This document shows, in pieces, positions 8,166 through 57,293 of a stretch of 64,000 nt of DNA. Where the stretch lies: positions 62,001 through 126,000 of IMG/VR virus record IMGVR_UViG_3300022868_000009; one strand, given 5' to 3'. Each line of letters opens with the position of its first letter. Within the stretch, counting starts at the first letter, position 1. The notes beneath the pieces were generated by a model. It was not told the DNA's origin. It did no database searches and saw nothing but the letters and a program-made list of their open reading frames with translations. The translations under genes were made by a program, and so were the position numbers.

Positions 8166-9299
8166 TTATTTATTATTTTCAAATTCTACCATTTGTTTAA
8201 TTGTTTCATCTAAACTAATAGTTATATCCCAATTTGGATAATCTTTTTTAAATTTTGATAAATCAGAAATATACCAAATATGATCTCCAACTCTATTTTC
8301 ATCTGAAATTGTATAATTTTTCCAATCTGTGCCTGCAATCTCATTTATTTTATCTATTGCTTCTAAGACTGAAATATCATTTCCTCTTCCTCCACCTGCA
8401 TTATATACTTCTCCACATTTTGGGTTTTGGTGAAACTCCCAAAACATATTAAGTAAATCTAATGAATGTATATTATCTCTTACTTGTTTTCCTTTATAAC
8501 CAAATATAGTATATGGTTTATCATGTACTATACATTTAACTAAATATGAAAGAAAACCATGTAATTCTGTTCCTGCGTGATTAGGACCAGTTAAACAACC
8601 ACCTCTGAATATACCTATTGGCATATCAAAGTATTTACCATATTCTTGACACATAACATCCGCAGCAAGTTTAGAAGCACCAAACACAGAATGCAAAGAA
8701 TCATCTATCGGAAAATTTTCATCAATTGAATATAAAGTTCCATTCACTCTATTTTTAGCTTCAAATCTTTTTTCATCTTCATCAATTAAAAATGGTACAT
8801 ACATTGGATCTTTTTCTAAATCATAATCCCTACCTTTTGTTAAATTCTTATATTCAGAATAATAATAATTTGGTCTATCACCATAAACTTTATTTGTTGA
8901 TGTATAAATAAATGTAGATTTATCGCAATATTTCCTTGTTAGTTCTAACATATTTAATGTTCCATTAGCATTAATTGTAAAATCCGTTATTGGTTCTTTT
9001 GCAGCCCAATCATGAGATGGTTGCGCAGCAGCATGAATTATTATTTTTACATCTTGTGAATATTTAATGAATATTTTTTCTAATTCAACAAAATCTCTGA
9101 TATCACAATCATAAGAAATATAATTTTTTAATGTATTTTTAAGATGTTCGTTAGATTCTTTTGTTGATGCTTCTTCACCAAAAAAATACGATCTCATATC
9201 ATTATCTATTCCTACAACTTTGTAACCTTTTTCATGAAAAAAATTACATGATTGAGAACCGATCAATCCTGCAGACCCAGTTATAATTGCTACGTCCAT
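8166..9299 (-). CDS. NAD-dependent NDP-sugar epimerase (CDP-paratose 2-epimerase-like)
   Basis: ITGSAGLIG, HAAAQPSHD, STNKVYG, GASK, GKQVRDNIH. Confidence 0.9.
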   Translation of the reverse strand: MDVAIITGSAGLIGSQSCNFFHEKGYKVVGIDNDMRSYFFGEEASTKESNEHLKNTLKNYISYDCDIRDFVELEKIFIKYSQDVKIIIHAAAQPSHDWAAKEPITDFTINANGTLNMLELTRKYCDKSTFIYTSTNKVYGDRPNYYYSEYKNLTKGRDYDLEKDPMYVPFLIDEDEKRFEAKNRVNGTLYSIDENFPIDDSLHSVFGASKLAADVMCQEYGKYFDMPIGIFRGGCLTGPNHAGTELHGFLSYLVKCIVHDKPYTIFGYKGKQVRDNIHSLDLLNMFWEFHQNPKCGEVYNAGGGRGNDISVLEAIDKINEIAGTDWKNYTISDENRVGDHIWYISDLSKFKKDYPNWDITISLDETIKQMVEFENNK

Positions 9300-30880: not shown

Positions 30881-31117
30881 ATGAAAAAACAAAAAACATT
30901 TACAATTGATATGGATATTTGGGAAAAATTTAATGAAATAAGCAAACAAAAATCTATCAATAAATCTTTATTAATAGAAAATCATTTAAGAGATATCATT
31001 TATTTAAACGAAAACCCAAAACATTTTATTATCGTTGGAGATGAAATAAAATTATTAAAATATTCATTAAATGAAAATGAAATTTATATATTAGACGCAA
31101 AACCAAATATAAAATAA
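30881..31117 (+). CDS. Ribbon-helix-helix DNA-binding protein upstream of endonuclease
   Basis: MKKQKTFTID...F...SKQKSINKSLLIE. Confidence 0.6.
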   Translation: MKKQKTFTIDMDIWEKFNEISKQKSINKSLLIENHLRDIIYLNENPKHFIIVGDEIKLLKYSLNENEIYILDAKPNIK

Positions 31118-32694
31118 TGATATTAACCAAATCAGTCAAAGTTAAAGTGCATTCATCTATGGTAAAATACTATCAGAGTAAAGGATATGAATGCAAATAT
31201 AAAGATATAATTGATATTAAAGTAAAAGATCTAAAACAAAAAAGTACAGTAATTGTCGAAGTTGAATGTGATATATGTGGTGAAAAGAAAAATATACCAT
31301 TGTTTAGATATAACAACAATTTTAATAATAAAAATATGTATGTTTGTTCAGCTTCTTGCGCACAAACAAAAATAAAATTAACTAAATTAGAAAATCATGG
31401 AGATGAAAATTTTTCAAATATTAAAAAACGAAAAGAAACATGCAAAGAAAGATACAACAACGAAAATTATAAGAATATTGAAAAAAAGAAAGAGACAAAT
31501 ATAGAAAGATATGGAGTTGAACACGTGATAATGAATGAAAATATAAAAAATAAAAGACTAGAAACATATAAAAAATTATATGGTGAAGAGCACCCAATGA
31601 AAAATAATGATATAATTCTAAAGAAAAAACAAACATCTAAAAATAAACATGGTGATAAAAATTATAACAACATACAAAAAACACTCAAAACAATTAAAAA
31701 TAAACAACTTCAAAATATTGAAAAATATAATATTAAAGCTATCAATTATCAAGATTTTCTTTTTGAAGTTGAATGTGATAAAGGACACAATTATAAAATA
31801 TCATTCGATTTATTATACAAAAGACATAAATATAATGTAGAAAAATGTACAATATGTAATCCTATTGGAATCAAATATTCAAATAGTGAGTATAATTTAT
31901 TACAATTCATTAAAGAAAATTATAATGGTGAAATAATAAAAAATTCAAGAAAAATAATAAAACCGTATGAATTAGACATATTTTTACCAAATTTAAATTT
32001 AGCATTTGAATATAATGGATTATGGTGGCACAATGAATTATATAAAGATAAAAATTATCACAAAACTAAAAGTGATTTATGTGATAAAAATAATATACAA
32101 TTAATACATATATGGGAAGATAACTGGATTTATAAACAAGATATAGTTAAATCTATGATATTAAATAAATTAGGTAAAACACTAAATAAAATATATGCAA
32201 GAAAATGTGAAATTAGAGAAATTAAAAATAATGATTTAATAAAACAATTTTTAAACAATAATCATATACAAGGTTTTGTTGGTTCGAGTGTAAAATTGGG
32301 TTTATATTACAATAATGAATTAACTTCTTTAATGACTTTTAAAAAAGATAATAATAATTTTGAATTAAACAGATTTTGTAATAAGTTAAATACTAATGTT
32401 ATTGGTGGTGCATCTAAATTATTTAAATACTTTACTAAAAATTATAACTTTTATGAAATAAAAACATTTGCAGATAGAACTTATTCAAATGGAAACTTAT
32501 ATTTTAAGATGAATTTTAAAATAGGTAAATTTATAAAACCAGATTATTATTATATTGTTAATGGTATTAGAAAACATAAATTTAATTTTAGAAAACAAAA
32601 AGATAACATAAAAACAGAACATGAAATTATGTTAGAAAAAAATATTTATAGAATATATGACGCAGGTAAATATAGATTTACCTACTCATTATAA
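31117..32694 (+). CDS. Free-standing putative homing endonuclease
   Basis: CDIC zinc motif, ERYGVE repeats, ELDIFLP..NLAFEYNGLWWH, IHIWED, conserved RIYDAG end. Confidence 0.8.
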   Translation: MILTKSVKVKVHSSMVKYYQSKGYECKYKDIIDIKVKDLKQKSTVIVEVECDICGEKKNIPLFRYNNNFNNKNMYVCSASCAQTKIKLTKLENHGDENFSNIKKRKETCKERYNNENYKNIEKKKETNIERYGVEHVIMNENIKNKRLETYKKLYGEEHPMKNNDIILKKKQTSKNKHGDKNYNNIQKTLKTIKNKQLQNIEKYNIKAINYQDFLFEVECDKGHNYKISFDLLYKRHKYNVEKCTICNPIGIKYSNSEYNLLQFIKENYNGEIIKNSRKIIKPYELDIFLPNLNLAFEYNGLWWHNELYKDKNYHKTKSDLCDKNNIQLIHIWEDNWIYKQDIVKSMILNKLGKTLNKIYARKCEIREIKNNDLIKQFLNNNHIQGFVGSSVKLGLYYNNELTSLMTFKKDNNNFELNRFCNKLNTNVIGGASKLFKYFTKNYNFYEIKTFADRTYSNGNLYFKMNFKIGKFIKPDYYYIVNGIRKHKFNFRKQKDNIKTEHEIMLEKNIYRIYDAGKYRFTYSL

Positions 32695-33579: not shown

Positions 33580-35226
33580 ATGTTATTAACAAAGAATATT
33601 AAAATTAAAATAAATAATAGGTATATAAAATATTATCAAAATCTTGGATATCAGGTAAAAGGCGGTCAAGAATGTGAAATAAAAATAGAAGATTTATCAA
33701 AAAAAAGCCACGCTTTTGTTGATGTTAAATGTGATATATGTCAAGAAGAAAAAACAATTAAATATTATAATTATACTGAAAATATACTAAATCAGGGTTT
33801 TTACACTTGTAAAAAATGTAAACATCATAAGACAAAAATCACAAATCTAGAGAAATATGGTGTAGAATGTACATTACAATCTGATGATGTTTTAGAAAAG
33901 ATAAAAAATAAAAACATAGAAAAATTTGGCACAGACCATTATTCAAAAACAAATGAATTTAAAGAAAAAATAAAAGAGACAAATCTAGAAAAATATGGTG
34001 TTGAAAGTAATATGCAATCAATCGAATTTAAGGAAAAATCTATATTATTTAATCTGAAAAGTTACGGTGTTGATCATTATTCAAAGACTAATGAATTTAA
34101 AGAAAAAGTAAAAAAAACAAATTTAGAAAAATATGGTGTTGATCATTATTCAAAAACTGATGAATTCAAGGAGAAGTTGTCTAAAAACCATTTTTTAAAA
34201 CTTAAAAAAGAAAACAACAATCTTAAAGAGATAAATGGTGATGAATATGTGATATATTGTGATAAATGTGATAAAGATTATACTATTCATAAATGGTTAT
34301 ATAAAAATAGAAAAAAGAAATATAAAACTAATACTTGTTTATATTGTAATCCTATAAATTCTTCTAAATCTGGAATGGAATTAAAATTATTAGAATTTAT
34401 AAAAGATAATTATAATGAAAAAATTGTTTATGGTAATAGAAAAATTATACCACCTAAAGAATTAGATATTTATTTACCAAATTTAAAATTGGCATTTGAG
34501 TTTAATGGTGTATATTGGCACAACGAATTAAACAAACATAACAAATATCATTTAGAAAAAACAGAAAAATGTCTAGAAAAAGGAATACAATTAATTCATG
34601 TTTTTGAAGATGATTGGATTTATAAACAAGATATAGTAAAATCTAGAATTTTGAATTTAATTGGAAAATCTAAAAAAATATTTGCTCGAAAATGTGAAAT
34701 TAAATTAGTCAATGATAATAAAGTTATTAGAAATTTTCTAGATGAAAATCATTTACAAGGGTTTGTAGGGAGCAAAATAAAATTGGGTTTGTATTATAAT
34801 GATGAATTAGTAAGTTTAATGACTTTTGGAAATTTGAGAAAACCTTTAAATCAGTCAAAAAAGGATGGGTCATTTGAATTATTAAGATTTTGTAATAAAT
34901 TGAGCATTTATGTTATTGGTGGTGCTTCAAAATTATTTAATTATTTCTTAAAAAACTATGAAATTTGTGAAATAATAAGTTATGCGGATAGAAGTTGGAG
35001 TAATGGAAATTTATATGAAAAACTTGGTTTTGAATTTATACATAAAACACAACCTAACTATTATTATATAATAGGCAATCTTAGAAAACATAGATTTAAT
35101 TTCAGGAAAGATAAATTAATTAAAGAAGGTTTTGATTCAAATAAAACCGAACATGAAATAATGTTAGAAAGGGAAATATATCGAATATATGATAGCGGTA
35201 GTTTAAAATATAGTTATTTAATATAA
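33580..35226 (+). CDS. Free-standing putative homing endonuclease (paralogue of 31117 and 38168)
   Basis: TNLEKYGV repeats; ELDIYLP..KLAFEFNGVYWH; RIYDSG. Confidence 0.8.
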   Translation: MLLTKNIKIKINNRYIKYYQNLGYQVKGGQECEIKIEDLSKKSHAFVDVKCDICQEEKTIKYYNYTENILNQGFYTCKKCKHHKTKITNLEKYGVECTLQSDDVLEKIKNKNIEKFGTDHYSKTNEFKEKIKETNLEKYGVESNMQSIEFKEKSILFNLKSYGVDHYSKTNEFKEKVKKTNLEKYGVDHYSKTDEFKEKLSKNHFLKLKKENNNLKEINGDEYVIYCDKCDKDYTIHKWLYKNRKKKYKTNTCLYCNPINSSKSGMELKLLEFIKDNYNEKIVYGNRKIIPPKELDIYLPNLKLAFEFNGVYWHNELNKHNKYHLEKTEKCLEKGIQLIHVFEDDWIYKQDIVKSRILNLIGKSKKIFARKCEIKLVNDNKVIRNFLDENHLQGFVGSKIKLGLYYNDELVSLMTFGNLRKPLNQSKKDGSFELLRFCNKLSIYVIGGASKLFNYFLKNYEICEIISYADRSWSNGNLYEKLGFEFIHKTQPNYYYIIGNLRKHRFNFRKDKLIKEGFDSNKTEHEIMLEREIYRIYDSGSLKYSYLI

Positions 35227-38167: not shown

Positions 38168-39979
38168 TTAATTCTTAAAAATGTATTTATAATTACCACT
38201 ATTATATATTCTATAAATACCTCTTTCTATCATTATTTGATGTTCACTTTTATCTAAATCAAAACCTTCTTTAACCAACACGTCTTTTCTATATCCAAAC
38301 CTATATTTTCTCACACCATCTACTACATAATAATAATTTGGTTTAGAAATATGAGATAATTCAAAACCTAAATTTTCATATAATTTGCCATTTGAATGTG
38401 ATCTATCTGCATAACTTATTATTTTTTTAAAAAAATAATTTTTAGTAAAATGTTTAAACAATTTTGAAGCACCACCAATAACATTAGTATTTAACTTATT
38501 ACAAAATCTTATAAGTTCAAATTCACCTTCTACACTAGAAGAATTTTGAGACTTTCTTTTTTTACCAAAAGTCATTAAAGAAACTAACTCATTTTCATAA
38601 TAAAGACCTAGTTTAATACTAGAACCAACAAAACCTTGTAAATGATTATCATCTAGAAATTTTCTTATCAATTTATTATCTTCAATAACTTTAATTTCAC
38701 ATTTTCTTGCATAAATTCTATTTGGTGTTTTACCTATTTTGTTTAATATTATGGATTTAACTATGTCTTGTTTATACAACCAATCATCTTCCCAAATATG
38801 TGTTAGCTGAACACCTTTTTTAAAACAATTATCTGTTTTATTTAAATGATAATTATTATCTTTATTTAATTCGTTATGCCAATACAAACCATTAAATTCA
38901 AAAGCTAATTTCAAATTTGGTAAATAAATATCTAATTCTAATGGTTTAATAACATCTCTATCTGATGTTTCAATGACACCAGTATAATTTTCTTCAATAA
39001 AACTTAATAATTGTATTTCTAATCCTGATGTGTGTTGATTAATTGGGTTGCAAATAGTACACAATTCAGTTTTACATTTAACTCTATTTGAAAACAAGGA
39101 TGAATTAATAATATAATCATGTCCTTTATCACATAATATTGTATATTCTTTATTATCAAAATCAATATTCAAAAAATTTAAATAACTATAATTACTTAAA
39201 AGATATTTTTTAGTTCTTTTTCTATTATTCTCTTTAATATTTTTTATAACTTTTTCTGTTTGAAAATAATTTTCAACACCATATCTTTCTAAGATTGTAG
39301 TTTTTCTTTTTTCTTTTAATTCATTAGAATATGATGGATTTTCAACACCATAATTTTCCATTAATGATTTTATTGATTTCTCTCTAATTTCTTCTGATTG
39401 TTGAGGATACTCTACACCATACTTTTCTAAATTTGTTTTTTTAATTTTATCTTTTATTTCTTCTGATTCAAACGGATTTTCAACACCATATTTTTCTAGA
39501 TTTGTTTTGGATATTTTATCACGTATCTCTTTATTAGATAGAGAAAATTCAACACCATACTTTTCTAGATTTGTTTGTTTTTGCTTTCTTTTTACACACT
39601 CATTTTGAGTAAAATGTTCGACACCATATTTTTCCAAACTTGTTTTTTTAACTCTATCAACATATTCCTCAGTCTGTGTATAATATTCACTGCCATATTT
39701 TTCAAATGTTGTCTTTTTAACTTTTTCTTGAGCACACTTAGAACTACAAGCATAAAACCCACCATTATTAATATTTTTAACATATTTTTGATACATTAAA
39801 TCCTTTTCATTATTACAAAAATCACATTTTACTTTTATTTTTACATGACTACCATCAGATAAATATTTAGGATGTATATTTAAAATATCTCCCAATTGTA
39901 CATCTTTCGAATATTCTTCTTTTAGTTTACTTAAATTTCTTTTTGTTACTTTAATTAATGTTTTTTCTGTTAAAATCAT
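38168..39979 (-). CDS. Free-standing putative homing endonuclease
   Basis: Many TNLEKYGVE repeats; ELDIYLP..KLAFEFNGLYWH; RIYNSG. Confidence 0.8.
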   Translation of the reverse strand: MILTEKTLIKVTKRNLSKLKEEYSKDVQLGDILNIHPKYLSDGSHVKIKVKCDFCNNEKDLMYQKYVKNINNGGFYACSSKCAQEKVKKTTFEKYGSEYYTQTEEYVDRVKKTSLEKYGVEHFTQNECVKRKQKQTNLEKYGVEFSLSNKEIRDKISKTNLEKYGVENPFESEEIKDKIKKTNLEKYGVEYPQQSEEIREKSIKSLMENYGVENPSYSNELKEKRKTTILERYGVENYFQTEKVIKNIKENNRKRTKKYLLSNYSYLNFLNIDFDNKEYTILCDKGHDYIINSSLFSNRVKCKTELCTICNPINQHTSGLEIQLLSFIEENYTGVIETSDRDVIKPLELDIYLPNLKLAFEFNGLYWHNELNKDNNYHLNKTDNCFKKGVQLTHIWEDDWLYKQDIVKSIILNKIGKTPNRIYARKCEIKVIEDNKLIRKFLDDNHLQGFVGSSIKLGLYYENELVSLMTFGKKRKSQNSSSVEGEFELIRFCNKLNTNVIGGASKLFKHFTKNYFFKKIISYADRSHSNGKLYENLGFELSHISKPNYYYVVDGVRKYRFGYRKDVLVKEGFDLDKSEHQIMIERGIYRIYNSGNYKYIFKN

Positions 39980-49547: not shown

Positions 49548-49751
49548 ATGAAATGGGATAAATTTATTGATGATACTTTCCAACTTAAAGAATGGGATTA
49601 TATAGATCCTAAAATAATAAATTACATTAAAGATAATTTTTTGACACTTAATAAAGATAATGTTAAAAAGTTACATCTTCCCAAAAAATTAACACACCAT
49701 ATTTCAATTAGATTAGAATATTTAGAAGAATTTTCTAATATTAGACCTTAA
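49548..49751 (+). CDS. Hypothetical protein
   Basis: Short ORF after AATATATA motif. Confidence 0.4.
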   Translation: MKWDKFIDDTFQLKEWDYIDPKIINYIKDNFLTLNKDNVKKLHLPKKLTHHISIRLEYLEEFSNIRP

Positions 49752-50119
49752 TTAATATTCTCAAAGAATTCTTTAACAGGTAATAATATATAACGTGTGC
49801 GCGCGCATGCGTATATAAAAAAATTTTTCAAAAGATTAAAATTTTTAAAAATTTTATTTCATTAATATTATCTTTAACGGTAATACTTATTTTCCTAAGA
49901 ATAAAGAATTTTCAACTTATTGAATTTTTTAGTATAATTAGTATAATCTTTTAATTTTAGAAAAAAGTGACTTTTTAAGTCAAATATATAATTTTCACAC
50001 TTTTATAAATTTTTAAAATTTTTAAACTTTTTAAAATTTTGAAAGTACAAGAAAATAGATTACGAAAAAATAATATTTTTTTAAAGATTTTTCGAAATCA
50101 AAACGTTCTTTAAAATATT

Positions 50120-51050
50120 GTAAAATATAGTCTGTGCTTGGGCAGACGTTCATCTTCGGATGGAGCAGATAAAACATCGTAAGGTGTCGAAAGAGAGGAA
50201 GGTCACTTATTCTCGCCAATAGTCTTCGGATTATGGTCAATCTAAGCAAGTCTCATTTTTGTCTTGACCAACAAGACAGCCTCAATAGAAAGGGGATAAG
50301 ATGAAACAACGTGAGTAACGATCTTTGGTAAGAATAAGATGGCTCAATTGCCCGCAAGGGGAACAAAAGTTATCAAATATAGAATGGGGACATTCCAATA
50401 TCGTTTAATCCACTCATTAAGTGTTCGTTGATAGATAAGAGATAGAATAGTAGTTCGAATGTGGAAAGTTAGAGCATTATTCAGTTTCAAAGGTGTTGAA
50501 AGATGTCTTAACAAACGGCACAGTAAGTCCTCCGGGCTGAAACGCATACGAAGGGTCGTATTTTGTAAGGTGAAACTTATGAATCGGTGGACAGGCACTT
50601 TGTGGTGATATCATTTTTTATTAGCTCACAATGGTAGAGCAGTAGTATTCTAACTAAAGGTAGATGGTTCAATTCCATCATAAAAAAAGCAAAGTCCCTG
50701 TCCGTCTGTTAAGTAAAGGTGCTTAAAACTTTACACTTCGGTGAATAAAGTGGATTCAAAGCTCGCAAGGTAGAGAATCTTTGATACAGTAGCCTCAACT
50801 TTTAACCCTAGCAGGTTATTAACGCCACGATAGTGGTGAGTGTACGCAAAATATCGAGTAACTTAATAGTACTAGTGATGTAACCACATAAAAAGTTACA
50901 GTACAGCTGGTGTACATAGTTGCCTTTCGAGGGATTATGTGGACAATTCAGGAACGAAGAATAGCAACTCTTTGATAATCTGAAGAAAGCAAAACATATA
51001 ATAAACTGTGTGTTTTACCAGTATGACAGTTTTTAGTCTCAAAATTGTTT
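50120..51050 (+). ncRNA. Large ornate ncRNA, GOLLD-like (boundaries approximate)
   Basis: No credible ORF; GC-richer than flanks; UUCG/GCAA hairpins at 50151-50162, 50219-50234, 50351-50360, 50734-50743, 50923-50932; embedded tRNA-like element; terminal stem with AGUCUC loop at 51026-51048; next to tRNA genes. Confidence 0.6.
50615..50687 (+). pseudogene. tRNA-like element inside the large ncRNA (all-AU acceptor stem, 6-nt anticodon loop)
   Basis: TTTTTAT/ATAAAAA acceptor, GCTC/GAGC D-stem, GATGG-TTCAATT-CCATC T-arm. Confidence 0.75.
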
Positions 51051-51450
51051 CTCTATCAAGATAAAAACCTTGACGTGGTGATAGAGCTTTAAACTAATAT
51101 TTATCAAATGTGAAAAAAGTAGTAGAAATTAAAAGACGCAACACGCAGCCCGTTCTCTGCGCTACTTCACAAAAATGTGAACGATAAAAATCTTCACATT
51201 TAAATACACCAAGAATAACACCATCACTGTAGCCCTAAAGGAGTGATGTTGTCGCATAAAAACGATTAGTGTTAGTGTGTGTTTGAGAAGACGACGGGGG
51301 ATTTCACAAAAGTAACATGAATCAAGTAGTGTGAAATAAGAAATTCCTCCAAGTTTTCTCGGAAAATTTTTTTATGCAAGAAATAATTTGTATATTGTCA
51401 AAAATAGAGAATAAATATTTAATATATAAAAAATAGTAAAAACAGAAACA

Positions 51451-51537
51451 ATGAATAATACTTTTAAACATAATAGTTCATCTTTTCATAAGTGGTTTAG
51501 CCGCTTCGGATCGGGAATGTTATGCCTTAAAAGTTAA
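51451..51537 (+). CDS. Putative attenuator leader peptide 1 (MNNTFKHNSSSFHKWFSRFGSGMLCLKS)
   Basis: 28-codon ORF ~30 nt after TAATATATA motif; overlaps antiterminator strand; F/H/W codons match downstream tRNAs. Confidence 0.7.
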   Translation: MNNTFKHNSSSFHKWFSRFGSGMLCLKS

Positions 51538-51566
51538 GATTAAAAAATATTAATCAACAAAGGGAC

Positions 51567-51604
51567 AAACTCGATTCTAACAAGATTCGGGTTTTTTGTT
51601 TTTT
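51567..51604 (+). terminator. Intrinsic terminator upstream of tRNA-His/Trp/Phe (attenuator)
   Basis: AAACTCGATTCT-AACA-AGATTCGGGTTT then T-tract. Confidence 0.8.
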
Positions 51605-51626
51605 ATAAACGTTCTTAAAAATATAT

Positions 51627-51702
51627 GGTGGTTATAGTGTTAGTGGTAGCACGGCAGGTTGTGGTTCTGTTAGGATGGATTCAAATTCCATTAATCACCC
51701 CA
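51627..51702 (+). tRNA. tRNA-His(GTG), encoded G-1 and CCA
   Basis: Cloverleaf; GCAGG-TTGTGGT-TCTGT anticodon arm. Confidence 0.92.
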
Positions 51703-51712
51703 AATTTAACAC

Positions 51713-51783
51713 AGGTCTATAGTGTAACGGTAGCATAAGTGATTCCAAACCACTTGGTCCGGGTTCAAATCCTGGTAGGCCTG
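51713..51783 (+). tRNA. tRNA-Trp(CCA)
   Basis: AGGTCTA/TAGGCCT acceptor; TTCCAAA loop; CCGGG-TTCAAAT-CCTGG. Confidence 0.92.
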
Positions 51784-51852
51784 CGAGAAGTTTAAATATG
51801 GTTAAATGAAGGATGGTTAAAAGGTAGAAAAATGAAATATTAATACAAATTT

Positions 51853-51925
51853 GGAACCGTGGTGTAGGTGGTCTGCACGATACTCTGAAGAAGTATAGGT
51901 ACCCGTTCAACTCGGGTCGGTTCCA
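51853..51925 (+). tRNA. tRNA-Phe(GAA)
   Basis: GGAACCG/CGGTTCC acceptor; ATACT-CTGAAGA-AGTAT. Confidence 0.9.
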
Positions 51926-52002
51926 CTTTAAACTTTTAAATTTTAATATATATTAATGTGAAGAAAGAACCAGTTTTAATGAAAAATAATAAAAATTAAC
52001 AA

Positions 52003-53094: not shown

Positions 53095-53116
53095 ATTTTT
53101 AGGTACAAAGAATTAC

Positions 53117-53146
53117 AAACCGAGTCTGAAAAGATTCGGTTTTTTT
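53117..53146 (+). terminator. Intrinsic terminator 2 nt before tRNA-Lys (attenuator)
   Basis: AAACCGAGTCT-GAAA-AGATTCGGTTT plus T-tract. Confidence 0.85.
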
Positions 53147-53148
53147 AT

Positions 53149-53226
53149 TGGCCATTAGCTCAGTAGGTTTAGAGCATCTGCCTTTTAAGCAGAGAGTCCA
53201 GGGTTCGATCCCCTGATGGCCAACCA
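53149..53226 (+). tRNA. tRNA-Lys(TTT) with encoded CCA
   Basis: TGGCCAT/ATGGCCA; TCTGC-CTTTTAA-GCAGA; CAGGG-TTCGATC-CCCTG. Confidence 0.95.
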
Positions 53227-53305: not shown

Positions 53306-53420
53306 GGCTTATAACAAATAGGTTGTATTTATAGAGCATTTGTCGGGTTACCGCATGTCACTAAAATGTATATTTTAAGAGTTACTAGAGATATATGAGG
53401 TTCGAATCCTTAATAAGCCA
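53306..53420 (+). ncRNA. tRNA-like RNA (acceptor stem and T-arm intact, enlarged non-canonical centre)
   Basis: GGCTTAT/ATAAGCC-A; TGAGG-TTCGAAT-CCTTA; 115 nt. Confidence 0.65.
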
Positions 53421-53424
53421 CTAT

Positions 53425-55985: not shown

Positions 55986-57293
55986 ATGAGAAATATACAA
56001 AAATTATCAGAAAAAGAATTAATAGTACATTTAAAATCTATCTATAATAAACAGATAGATATTTATGATAAATTTGAAAAAACAGGTGAAATTGAACCAA
56101 TTATTACCGATTTTGATGATCAAGATGCATATAAATATTTTATGCAATATGCAATCTTTAAAACTCACCCAAACGCAATAGTAAAATTTAAATTTTTTAA
56201 CCGTGGAAAACATAAATTTCCAGTCGGTTCAGATTATCATATTAAAAAACAAATAGAATCTATGAAAAATCTTAGATTCACTCCTGAAATAGAAAGATCA
56301 TTTAGAAAAAAATTTTCAAATATGAAAGGTGAATCTTATTTTGATGAATCTTTTTATGGTTTTTTAAGAAGTTATAGATACGATCCATCTGAAGTTAAAG
56401 TAACTCAAACAGGAGAAGATATCGAAATAGAAATAACTGGTTCTTGGTTAAAAACAATTTATTGGGAAACACAAATAATGCCGATTTTAACAGAAACTTG
56501 GTATATGTTAACTGATCAATATAAAAATATTCATAATTTTGATCATCTATATGATACACACAGAGACAAATATCGAAGTTTTATAACAGCCGAATCTAAT
56601 ATTGCAGAATTTGGTTTAAGAAGAAGATATTCAAAACTAATACAAGAATTTATCAATATACATTTTATGTGGGAATCACCAGCTAGATATATTGGTACGT
56701 CTAATTGTATGTTCGCTAGAAAATTTAATGTTAAAGCCATTGGAACACAAGCTCATGAATGGATAATGTTTCATGCCGCAAAATATGGACCAGAACTAGC
56801 AAATAAGATATCTTTAGAAAATTGGGTTAAAGTTTACAGAGGAGAATTAGGTATTGCGTTATCTGATACTTATGGTACAGACAATTTCTTAAAATCATTT
56901 GATACTTTACATAGTAAATTATTTGATGGTGTTAGATGGGATTCTGGTGATTTTAAATTATTTACTGATAAAATAATTGGACACTATAAATCATATGGAA
57001 TTAATCCTAAATCCAAAACAATTGTCTATTCTGATGGTATAAATTCATTTTTAAAAATACGAGATATTATAAGATATGCAAGTGATAAAATTAAATGCAC
57101 GTTAGGAATTGGTACTTATTTAACAAATGATATTGGTGTACCAACTATGAATATTGTTATTAAAATGACAGAAGCTAAACCTGAAAAAATGGATTGGAGA
57201 TATTGTATAAAGACATCTGATTCATCTGGTAAATATACTTATACTGACAAAAAAACATTAAACAGATACTTAGAAGATTTGAATATAAATTAA
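55986..57293 (+). CDS. pncB: Nicotinate phosphoribosyltransferase
   Basis: DAYKYFMQ, EFGLRRR, GTSN, GTQAHEW, ALSDTYG, GVRWDSGD, YSDG, GIGTYLTND, NIVIKM. Confidence 0.92.
   Translation: MRNIQKLSEKELIVHLKSIYNKQIDIYDKFEKTGEIEPIITDFDDQDAYKYFMQYAIFKTHPNAIVKFKFFNRGKHKFPVGSDYHIKKQIESMKNLRFTPEIERSFRKKFSNMKGESYFDESFYGFLRSYRYDPSEVKVTQTGEDIEIEITGSWLKTIYWETQIMPILTETWYMLTDQYKNIHNFDHLYDTHRDKYRSFITAESNIAEFGLRRRYSKLIQEFINIHFMWESPARYIGTSNCMFARKFNVKAIGTQAHEWIMFHAAKYGPELANKISLENWVKVYRGELGIALSDTYGTDNFLKSFDTLHSKLFDGVRWDSGDFKLFTDKIIGHYKSYGINPKSKTIVYSDGINSFLKIRDIIRYASDKIKCTLGIGTYLTNDIGVPTMNIVIKMTEAKPEKMDWRYCIKTSDSSGKYTYTDKKTLNRYLEDLNIN

What the first reader, a model, noticed from the sequence alone, without database searches (positions are those of the whole stretch)
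50120..51050. ~0.9 kb GOLLD-like ornate RNA
Seen in sequence: an ORF-free, GC-elevated island with many tetraloop hairpins and long-range helices on the + strand, directly upstream of tRNA genes. Established: GOLLD RNAs are large phage ncRNAs of unknown function associated with tRNA genes. The family assignment is my inference from size, context and the terminal AGUCUC-loop stem.
Basis: partly seen in the sequence, partly recalled or inferred. Interest (0 to 1): 0.6.

Follow-up and report, generated by a model that had tools for sequence, protein, structure and literature searches.

The report
Divergent GOLLD RNA in huge phage
The flagged island is a real but unusually divergent copy of GOLLD, a large phage RNA known to self-assemble into a hollow cage, and it carries a tRNA-shaped module in its inner linker; it is a new member of a known family whose function is still unknown.

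Summary
Window 50120-51050 (+) is an ORF-poor island at 34-40% GC in a 25% GC genome. It folds better than shuffles only on the + strand and is enriched in tetraloop hairpins.

The Rfam GOLLD model aligns full length to 50548-51016 (93.9 bits, E about 1e-24). That is below the curated cut-off of 150; other viral GOLLDs score 161-287. Models I built from 28 viral GOLLD 5' domains hit 50151-50294 (E 9e-11) and 50438-50546 (E 9e-7), colinear with the Rfam match. The 143 nt between them are not recognised, a pattern that recurs in other GOLLDs.

ARAGORN calls it a CUA suppressor, but the best-paired register has a 6-nt loop, and the 344 kb record shows no TAG recoding. The structured island continues for about 0.5 kb to a strong terminator near 51600; whether that tail belongs to GOLLD is unknown.

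The host is a huge phage related to the 634-735 kb Mahaphage genomes. No close relative of this copy exists in the collections searched, and no expression data could be obtained.

Verdict: new, divergent member of a known family. Moderate interest.

The parts
50101..50118 (+). 18-nt motif AAACGTTCTTTAAAATAT, copy 1, ending just before the GOLLD 5' end. It may be a promoter or leader element, or one boundary of an inserted cassette.
   Evidence: Direct repeat with 51607-51624. These are the only two copies with 0-1 mismatch in the 344 kb record; a copy with 2 mismatches lies elsewhere on the - strand, away from RNA genes, and hits at 3 mismatches are at chance level. Phased A/T tracts lie upstream at 49988-50044.
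50130..50147 (+). First hairpin of the RNA (GUCUGU-loop-GCAGAC), probably the P1 equivalent.
   Evidence: -8.4 kcal/mol, z -2.6. Model R1 aligns from 50151, leaving this hairpin in place of the model's first stem.
50151..50294 (+). GOLLD 5' domain, first third.
   Evidence: Covariance model R1 (28 viral GOLLDs): 41.4 bits, E 8.6e-11, full model. It is the only significant hit in the 64 kb window on either strand.
50295..50437 (+). Divergent middle of the 5' domain (143 nt).
   Evidence: Model R2 finds nothing here, although it detects untrained main-type GOLLDs. L002, L061, L072 and L074 show the same gap of 119-183 nt. The segment shares a GCTCAA..GCC.GCAA.GG.AAC hairpin block with L002.
50438..50546 (+). 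GOLLD 5' domain, last third.
   Evidence: Model R3: 35.8 bits, E 8.9e-7, full model; the next best hit has E 0.74.
50548..50605 (+). Hairpin before the linker (first 62 positions of the Rfam model; P13 in the published numbering).
   Evidence: Rfam alignment.
50615..50687 (+). tRNA-like module embedded in the linker (J13/15). It has a 7-bp all-A-U acceptor stem and good D and T arms. The anticodon arm is GUAGU/ACUAA with a 6-nt loop AUUCUA.
   Evidence: Rfam tRNA 45.4 bits. ARAGORN calls anticodon CTA, but with only 2 Watson-Crick pairs and 1 G-U pair in that stem. The free fold gives the 6-nt loop. The same position is occupied in 28 distinct viral GOLLDs.
50688..51016 (+). Conserved junction (AAAAGCAAAGUC) and GOLLD 3' domain.
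   Evidence: Rfam RF02032 model positions about 131-416. The conserved single-stranded blocks are present: AAAGGUG, CGCAA, GAGUA, GUGGA.AA, GGAA, AUAAUC and AAAG.
51025..51049 (+).
   Evidence: -4.4 kcal/mol, z -1.3. It lies outside the Rfam model.
51051..51559 (+). Structured, non-coding 3' tail of unknown affiliation.
   Evidence: 51017-51420 has z -3.8 on + (0 of 100 shuffles) and -1.4 on -. There is no Rfam family, no tRNA remnant, no paralogue elsewhere in the record and no BLAST similarity to the other fetched loci. The longest + strand ORF is 28 aa.
51560..51604 (+). Intrinsic terminator: core hairpin 51570-51591 followed by U6GU6.
   Evidence: -14.1 kcal/mol, z -4.4, 0 of 200 shuffles. 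A similar hairpin with a U run lies before tRNA-Lys at 53115-53149.
51607..51624 (+). 18-nt motif, copy 2 (AAACGTTCTTAAAAATAT), ending 3 nt before tRNA-His.
51628..51926 (+). Context: tRNA-His(GTG), tRNA-Trp(CCA) and tRNA-Phe(GAA) on the same strand.

Best explanation
Window about 50120-51016 (+) encodes a divergent member of the GOLLD family of large phage RNAs.

Shown here: it has the family's two-domain layout, with a tRNA-like module sitting in the linker between the two domains.
- 5' domain: 50130-50605. Its outer two thirds are recognisably homologous to other GOLLDs; its middle is diverged.
- 3' domain: 50688-51016, conserved.

Taken from published cryo-EM work on other GOLLDs, not tested here: such RNAs assemble without protein into closed 12- to 14-mer cages. 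The 5' domains form the caps, the 3' domains form the walls, and the linker points into the lumen. This copy would therefore hold about a dozen tethered tRNA-like modules inside a shell.

Inferred from sequence: the RNA starts near 50120, downstream of phased A/T tracts and an 18-nt motif shared with the tRNA-His gene. It ends either near 51016-51050 or at the strong terminator at about 51600. It is made together with the phage's tRNA genes.

Inferred function: the tRNA-like module is the working part rather than a translating tRNA. It would act as a caged or displayed tRNA mimic in the phage's take-over or protection of the host tRNA pool. The reason is that its anticodon loop has 6 nt here, and in relatives the loop is either strictly kept or abruptly switched while the acceptor stem is usually imperfect.
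For: Identity:
- RF02032 aligns full length at E 9.6e-25 and 3.9e-26.
- Models R1 and R3 of the 5' domain hit at E 8.6e-11 and 8.9e-7. Each is the sole significant hit in the window, and both are colinear with and abut the Rfam match.
- About 80 of the model's roughly 98 base pairs are standard pairs in this copy, and the conserved unpaired blocks are kept.
- Folding is strand-specific and tetraloops are enriched.
- A GC island is maintained in a 25% GC genome.

Setting:
- The record is a 344.6 kb virus.
- Its terminase is 51.5% identical to that of the 735 kb phage.
- Two relatives of 634-642 kb carry GOLLDs.
- tRNA genes are adjacent.

Linker module:
- The same site is occupied in 28 distinct viral GOLLDs.
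- An embedded tRNA in the lumen-facing linker is described in the literature.

Selection on the loop:
- L046/L057 differ at 3 of 8 loop positions against 4 of 853 elsewhere (p 2e-5).
- L029/L030 differ at 2 of 7 against 24 of 854 (p 0.02).
- In L013/L016 and L012/L050 the loop is unchanged with 24-29% divergence elsewhere. In L022/L053 it is also unchanged, though that 40% figure is inflated by a truncated locus.
Against: - The score is below Rfam's curated cut-off (93.9 against 150), and 18 model pairs are non-standard.
- The middle of the 5' domain is not recognised.
- No close relative exists, so there is no covariation evidence for this copy itself.
- No expression data could be obtained.
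- Cage formation and any function are extrapolated from other GOLLDs.
- The function of the family is unknown, so the 'tRNA mimic' role is my inference from loop evolution in relatives, not from this locus.
- The closest phage relative (735 kb) has no detectable GOLLD.
Confidence: 0.85

Rival explanations
1. The GOLLD scaffold is a storage or precursor form of a working amber-suppressor tRNA (anticodon CUA). Its release would time a switch to TAG read-through in this huge phage, as in TAG-recoded relatives of the same clade.
For: - ARAGORN calls anticodon CTA.
- The element has a full 7-bp acceptor stem and good D and T arms.
- The record also holds a canonical CTA tRNA at genome position 140629-140701.
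- Some Mahaphage-clade phages reassign TAG.
- An 'inhibited storage' idea for embedded tRNAs is in the literature.
- Only about 48% of the genome is in hand.
Against: - In the CUA register the anticodon stem has only 2 Watson-Crick pairs and 1 G-U pair out of 5.
- Rfam's alignment and the free-energy fold both give a 4-bp-plus stem with a 6-nt loop AUUCUA. That loop is closest to the CUUCUAA loops of relatives minus one base.
- TAG ends 19 long frames, and only one TAG lies between two long open stretches. Reading TAG as sense barely raises coding density.
Confidence: 0.07
2. The island holds two separate RNAs. GOLLD proper ends at about 51016-51050. An independent structured RNA of unknown kind occupies about 51051-51560 and ends at the terminator.
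For: - The Rfam model ends at 51016.
- In other viral loci the next tRNA follows GOLLD after roughly 90-260 nt, with no comparable tail.
- The tail folds far better than shuffles on + only.
- The tail has no similarity to any GOLLD part.
Against: - No promoter-like site was found between 51016 and 51400.
- No terminator separates GOLLD from the tail. The hairpin at 51025-51049 is weak and lacks a U run.
- The pair of 18-nt repeats brackets GOLLD and the tail together as one 1506-bp unit.
- The tail has no homologue anywhere, so it cannot be shown to be a conserved RNA.
Confidence: 0.35
3. The locus is a decaying GOLLD remnant that no longer functions. Its low score reflects erosion in a very AT-rich genome.
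For: - It has the lowest score of all GOLLDs examined (93.9 against 161-287 bits).
- 18 model pairs are non-standard.
- The tRNA-like module has a defective 6-nt anticodon loop.
- The closest phage relative lacks GOLLD.
Against: - GC is held 12-20 points above the genome background over the whole element.
- All major helices and the conserved unpaired blocks are present over the full model.
- The 5' domain segments are still detected.
- The excess folding energy is strand-specific.
- The tRNA-like module keeps perfect acceptor, D and T stems.
Confidence: 0.08
4. The island is a self-splicing intron, ROOL or another known large structured RNA rather than GOLLD.
For: Only the generic features (size, GC island, many hairpins, phage and tRNA context) would fit.
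Against: The permissive Rfam scan of 49700-51700 at E <= 10 lists GOLLD and tRNA as the only significant matches. No group I or II intron, ROOL, HEARO, raiA or RNase P model appears. No interrupted host gene flanks the island.
Confidence: 0.01

Closest known systems
GOLLD RNA (Rfam RF02032), including the structurally solved env-38 (14-mer cage) and Streptococcus agalactiae (12-mer) members
   Same: - Full-length alignment to the conserved 3' domain and the preceding hairpin.
- Two-domain layout with a variable linker.
- About 0.9 kb in size.
- Encoded by a phage next to tRNA genes.
- Conserved unpaired sequence blocks are kept.
   Different: - The score is far below other members (93.9 against 161-287 bits).
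- The middle of the 5' domain is unrecognisable.
- It is AT-rich (37% GC).
- A further structured tail of about 0.5 kb follows.
- Assembly into a cage was not tested.
GOLLDs with a tRNA or pseudo-tRNA in the linker J13/15 (mycobacterial tRNA-array GOLLDs; many IMG/VR phage GOLLDs found here)
   Same: - A cloverleaf element lies at exactly the same place, about 30 nt before the AAAGGUG block.
- The D arm and T arm are similar to those of the other embedded elements.
- Best identity to an embedded element is 75%, to L004.
   Different: - The anticodon loop here has 6 nt. The other 27 distinct elements have 7 nt (21) or 8 nt (6).
- The acceptor stem here is a perfect 7 bp of A-U pairs. Most relatives have only 4-5 of 7 pairs.
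GOLLDs of the 634 kb and 642 kb Mahaphage genomes (LR745206, LR756502)
   Same: - The phage clade is related: the terminases are 42-44% identical to this phage's.
- The local context is AT-rich with a GC island of about 1 kb.
- tRNA genes are adjacent.
   Different: - Those score 275-287 bits and have no embedded tRNA.
- Their 5' regions match none of my three 5' domain models.
- The window's copy is therefore not simply their orthologue.
ROOL RNA (another phage-encoded cage-forming RNA found near tRNA islands)
   Same: - Large, ornate and phage-borne.
- Found in a tRNA-rich neighbourhood.
- Forms a cage.
   Different: It has an unrelated sequence and fold, and there is no match here even at E <= 10.

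Membership tests
GOLLD RNA (RF02032) | Statistically significant, full-length match of sequence and structure to the conserved 3' domain model | tested here: met
   Model positions 1-416 of 416 align to 50548-51016 at 93.9 bits, E 9.6e-25 and 3.9e-26 over the whole record. The published census used E < 1e-5.
GOLLD RNA (RF02032) | Reaches Rfam's curated gathering score (150 bits). This is an operational cut-off, not a biological feature. | tested here: not met
   93.9 bits, so the match is absent from the default scan. Other viral GOLLDs score 161-287 bits. I treat this as a measure of divergence, since the E-value and the independent 5' domain hits are decisive.
GOLLD RNA (RF02032) | A less conserved 5' domain upstream, homologous to that of other GOLLDs | tested here: met
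   R1 hits at E 8.6e-11 (50151-50294) and R3 at E 8.9e-7 (50438-50546), colinear with the Rfam match. The middle third is not detected. The same is true of L002, L061, L072 and L074.
GOLLD RNA (RF02032) | Variable linker between the domains, optionally holding a tRNA | tested here: met
   The tRNA-like element at 50615-50687 lies inside the model's linker. The same site is occupied in 28 distinct relatives. Literature.
GOLLD RNA (RF02032) | Encoded by a phage or prophage, near tRNA genes | tested here: met
   The source is a virus record with a huge-phage terminase. There are 8 tRNA calls within 3.5 kb.
GOLLD RNA (RF02032) | Base pairs supported by compensatory changes | tested here: inconclusive
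   Only an identical twin contig exists, so this copy gives no covariation of its own. About 80 of roughly 98 model pairs are standard pairs in it.
GOLLD RNA (RF02032) | Protein-free assembly into a closed multimeric cage | not testable with these tools
   Known for env-38 and S. agalactiae GOLLD only.
GOLLD RNA (RF02032) | Expressed as a discrete RNA that rises during lytic growth | not tested
Decoding tRNA / amber suppressor tRNA(CUA) | Seven-nucleotide anticodon loop on a 5-bp stem, with U33 before the anticodon | tested here: not met
   The CUA register has 2 Watson-Crick pairs and 1 G-U pair out of 5. The best-paired register has a 6-nt loop AUUCUA.
Decoding tRNA / amber suppressor tRNA(CUA) | The genome shows in-frame TAG codons that need reading | tested here: not met
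   TAG ends 19 long frames, and 1 TAG lies between long open stretches. There is no gain in coding density. Only about 48% of the genome is in hand.
Group I / group II introns, ROOL, other large Rfam RNAs | Match to the family covariance model | tested here: not met
   None is listed at E <= 10 in 49700-51700.

The most novel reading that the evidence does not exclude
The tRNA-shaped module tethered in the lumen-facing linker may be the payload of GOLLD cages. Its anticodon loop is under lineage-specific selection: strictly kept in some lineages, and switched between otherwise 97-99% identical RNAs in others. The variants include 8-nt loops, stop-codon-matching loops and, here, a 6-nt loop. 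That pattern would fit a multivalent tRNA mimic that baits, blocks or titrates host factors that recognise anticodon loops, for example anticodon nucleases of anti-phage defence. It fits a tRNA used in translation less well. The window's copy, with a perfect acceptor stem but a loop that cannot decode, would be an extreme example.
Probability: 0.12. Interest if true: 0.8.

Novelty: new member of a known kind. Interest (0 to 1): 0.4.

Why it matters
GOLLD is one of the largest and most elaborate bacterial or phage RNAs. It now has a known cage structure but still no known function.

- **Range of the family.** This copy is among the most divergent found: 37% GC, in a phage whose terminase is closest to the largest known phage genomes. 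It is missed by the default Rfam threshold, so censuses that use the curated cut-off undercount GOLLDs in AT-rich huge phages.
- **What cage assembly needs.** This copy keeps the core blocks while replacing much else. That makes it useful for defining what is essential for assembly.
- **A testable lead on function.** The comparison it prompted suggests that the embedded tRNA-like module's anticodon loop is under selection while its acceptor stem is often imperfect. That points to a concrete test of GOLLD function.

Tried and rejected

- The default Rfam scan found only tRNAs; the permissive scan was needed.
- blastn of the island against 50,697 phage records gave no match.
- Two neighbouring proteins used to find related loci returned only the identical twin contig.
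- A junction-specific DNA pattern in viral and metagenome contigs returned only the window's own contig (Ga0222697_1000002), its twin (Ga0222658_1000003) and unrelated GOLLDs.
- The 735 kb, 636 kb and 462 kb relatives have no GOLLD. DNA hits there were only AT-rich low-complexity stretches.

**Weak or failed analyses**
- A sequence-only profile of the 5' domain gave just one weak hit (E 0.06). It was superseded by the covariance models.
- Model R2 of the middle 5' segment gave no hit.
- My first regex parse of the embedded tRNAs slipped register and was replaced.

**Ideas tested and set aside**
- TAG, TGA or TAA reassignment: no support.
- The tail as decayed tRNAs or a repeated element: ARAGORN at relaxed thresholds found none, and BLAST found only the terminator-like hairpin.
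- Origin of the embedded element: 75% identity to another embedded element against 71% to the phage's own tRNA-Phe, which is not decisive.
- Simple 'hypervariability' of the anticodon loop: rejected in favour of conserved-or-switched.
- The 18-nt motif as a plain sigma-70 promoter: the consensus scan finds none there, and its spacing to tRNA-His is too short. It remains unexplained.

Full report
**1. What was claimed and what is there**

- GC is 0.34-0.40 across 50100-51300, against 0.14-0.25 around it. The window as a whole is 25% GC.
- No ORF exceeds 49 aa on + or 84 aa on -.
- The 5' half folds better than shuffles only on the + strand: z -2.5 against +0.6.
- GNRA/UNCG tetraloop hairpins with stems of at least 4 bp number 5 on +. 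Dinucleotide shuffles give 1.0 +/- 1.0 (0 of 500 reach 5), and the - strand has none.
- tRNA-His, Trp and Phe follow from 51628, and two Lys and two Ser tRNAs from 53149.

**2. Family assignment**

The default Rfam scan lists only tRNAs. The permissive scan gives a full-length GOLLD (RF02032) alignment at 50548-51016, with 93.9 bits and E 9.6e-25. Over the whole 344.6 kb record the E-value is 3.9e-26. No intron, ROOL or other large RNA appears even at E <= 10.

The score is below Rfam's gathering cut-off of 150. Ten other viral GOLLDs that I scored reach 161-223 bits. Two more reach 169, and two from huge phages reach 275-287. So this copy is a clear outlier in divergence. The published census of GOLLDs used E < 1e-5.

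In the alignment, 18 of roughly 98 model pairs are non-standard. Six of those come from a local shift where the window has its own two hairpins. The conserved unpaired blocks are all present: AAAGGUG, CGCAA, GAGUA, GUGGA.AA, GGAA, AUAAUC and AAAG.

**3. The 5' domain**

Rfam's model covers only the last 5' hairpin, the linker and the 3' domain. To test 50120-50547, I collected 57 viral loci with a GOLLD core pattern. I aligned the 5' domains of 28 main-type members in three consecutive segments and built three covariance models. I then searched the whole window on both strands with filters off.
- **Segment A:** hits 50151-50294 (41.4 bits, E 8.6e-11; the next hit has E 3.6).
- **Segment C:** hits 50438-50546 (35.8 bits, E 8.9e-7; the next hit has E 0.74).
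- **Segment B:** finds nothing in the region.

The two hits are colinear, and the second ends one base before the Rfam match begins.

Controls show that segment B's model does detect untrained main-type GOLLDs (64-100 bits). They also show that L002, L061, L072 and L074 have the same 'A and C but not B' pattern, with gaps of 119-183 nt against 143 nt here. The window's middle segment shares one hairpin block with L002. A variable 5' region is a known property of the family.

**4. The embedded tRNA-like module**

It lies in the linker of the GOLLD model. tRNAs or pseudo-tRNAs in this linker (J13/15) are described in the literature, and the linker faces the cage lumen.

ARAGORN labels the element tRNA(CTA). 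In that register the anticodon stem has only 2 Watson-Crick pairs and 1 G-U pair. Rfam's alignment, my anchored parse and the unconstrained fold all give stem GUAGU/ACUAA with a 6-nt loop AUUCUA.

The 344 kb record shows no TAG reassignment. TAG ends 19 long frames, only one TAG lies between two open stretches of at least 90 codons, and reading TAG as sense barely changes coding density. I therefore do not file the element as a suppressor tRNA. A canonical, GC-rich tRNA(CUA) does exist elsewhere in the record, at genome position 140629-140701, outside the window.

**5. What the relatives say about the module**

In 28 distinct viral GOLLDs the same site holds a homologous cloverleaf, with intact D, T and anticodon stems. 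The acceptor stem mostly has only 4-5 of 7 pairs.

The anticodon loop has 7 nt in 21 elements, 8 nt in 6, and 6 nt only here. The 7-nt loops include CUCUUAA, CUUCUAA, UGA and UAG types without the long arm that Ser and Leu tRNAs need, and UCA.

The loop is not simply hypervariable:
- L046/L057 differ at 3 of 8 loop positions against 4 of 853 elsewhere (p 2e-5).
- L029/L030 differ at 2 of 7 against 24 of 854 (p 0.02).
- In L013/L016 and L012/L050 the loop is unchanged with 24-29% divergence elsewhere. In L022/L053 it is also unchanged, though that 40% figure is inflated by a truncated locus.

So the identity of the loop is under selection and switches episodically. I found no paper in the library that reports this. 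It is the basis for my inference that the module is the functional part of the RNA and acts as a tRNA mimic. That inference is weak and is marked as such.

**6. Extent and transcription signals**

The island continues beyond the family model. Region 51017-51420 folds with z -3.8 on + (0 of 100 shuffles) and -1.4 on -. It has no credible ORF, no Rfam match, no tRNA remnant and no paralogue.

A strong intrinsic terminator lies at 51560-51604 (z -4.4).

An 18-nt motif occurs at 50101-50118, just before the RNA, and again at 51607-51624, 3 nt before tRNA-His. These are the only copies with 0-1 mismatch in the 344 kb record. Phased A/T tracts lie upstream at 49988-50044. The motif may be a shared promoter or leader, or the two boundaries of a 1506-bp cassette (GOLLD, tail and terminator) inserted ahead of the tRNA operon. 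I cannot decide between these.

**7. The phage**

The record is an IMG/VR virus contig of 344,634 bp. CheckV estimates it as 48% complete, and it has 35 tRNA calls.

Its large terminase is 51.5% identical, over 95% of its length, to that of the 735 kb uncultured phage. It is 38-44% identical to those of the 634-642 kb phages. These are the largest Mahaphage-clade genomes, predicted to infect Bacteroidetes.

Two of those genomes carry high-scoring GOLLDs without an embedded tRNA and with unrelated 5' regions. Three, including the closest relative, carry none. GOLLD is therefore patchy and heterogeneous in this clade.

**8. Limits**

Only an identical twin contig exists for this copy. The copy's unique parts therefore have no covariation support. 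Cage assembly and function are extrapolated from other family members.

**9. Verdict**

It is a new and unusually divergent member of a known family, with three particular features:
- a linker tRNA-like module that is probably not a decoding tRNA;
- a diverged middle 5' segment;
- a structured 3' tail that may or may not belong to it.

Interest is moderate.

Noticed in passing
L002-L058 (viral GOLLD loci), linker about 100 to 30 nt before the AAAGGTG block: The tRNA-like element embedded in many phage GOLLDs has a conserved body, but its anticodon loop behaves in two ways. Some lineages keep it strictly. Others switch it between near-identical RNAs; the variants include 8-nt loops and stop-codon-matching loops. 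The acceptor stems are mostly imperfect.
   Followed up: partly
window 50101-50118 and 51607-51624: A direct repeat of 18 nt has only these two copies with 0-1 mismatch in the 344 kb record. It brackets GOLLD, the tail and the terminator as a 1506-bp unit ahead of tRNA-His. It may be a shared leader or promoter, or the boundaries of an insertion.
   Followed up: partly
window 51051-51559: A structured stretch of about 0.5 kb, + strand-specific and non-coding, has no known family, no homologue and no ORF.
   Followed up: partly
G000:C1:140629-140701 (outside the window): A canonical-looking, GC-rich tRNA with anticodon CUA sits in a genome part that shows no TAG reassignment. It may serve genes in the missing half of the genome.
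   Followed up: partly
window 53306-53422: A possible uncalled, interrupted tRNA-like gene lies between tRNA-Lys and tRNA-Ser. It has acceptor GGCTTAT/ATAAGCC and a good T arm. ARAGORN fits it only as Tyr(GTA) with an odd 29-nt insert and a poor D arm.
   Followed up: partly
window 53115-53149 and 51565-51600: Similar terminator-like hairpins with U runs sit immediately before both tRNA clusters, leaving almost no room for a separate promoter. The tRNAs may be made by read-through.
   Followed up: no
window 49793-49812: An alternating GC-rich palindrome (ACGTGTGCGCGCGCATGCGT) is isolated in a very AT-rich intergenic region upstream of the GOLLD promoter region.
   Followed up: no
G000:C1:300001-340000 (outside the window): Long-ORF coverage is very low (0.26-0.54) under the standard code, and reading TAG or TGA as sense rescues it only slightly. 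Five tRNA clusters lie there.
   Followed up: no
window 31117-32694, 33580-35226, 38168-39979: Three paralogous large proteins carry DUF7487. Elsewhere in the window are nicotinate phosphoribosyltransferase (55986-57293), a HAD-nucleotidyltransferase fusion (180-1532) and a sugar epimerase/dehydratase (8166-9299).
   Followed up: no
L082 (LR745206) and L083 (LR756502): The 634 kb and 642 kb Mahaphage genomes each carry a high-scoring GOLLD (275-287 bits) next to tRNAs. This is not mentioned in the paper that described those genomes.
   Followed up: partly
L054:9259-9705: One GOLLD-bearing viral contig also encodes a two-piece (alpha-type, permuted) tmRNA about 1.5 kb downstream of its GOLLD.
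   Followed up: no
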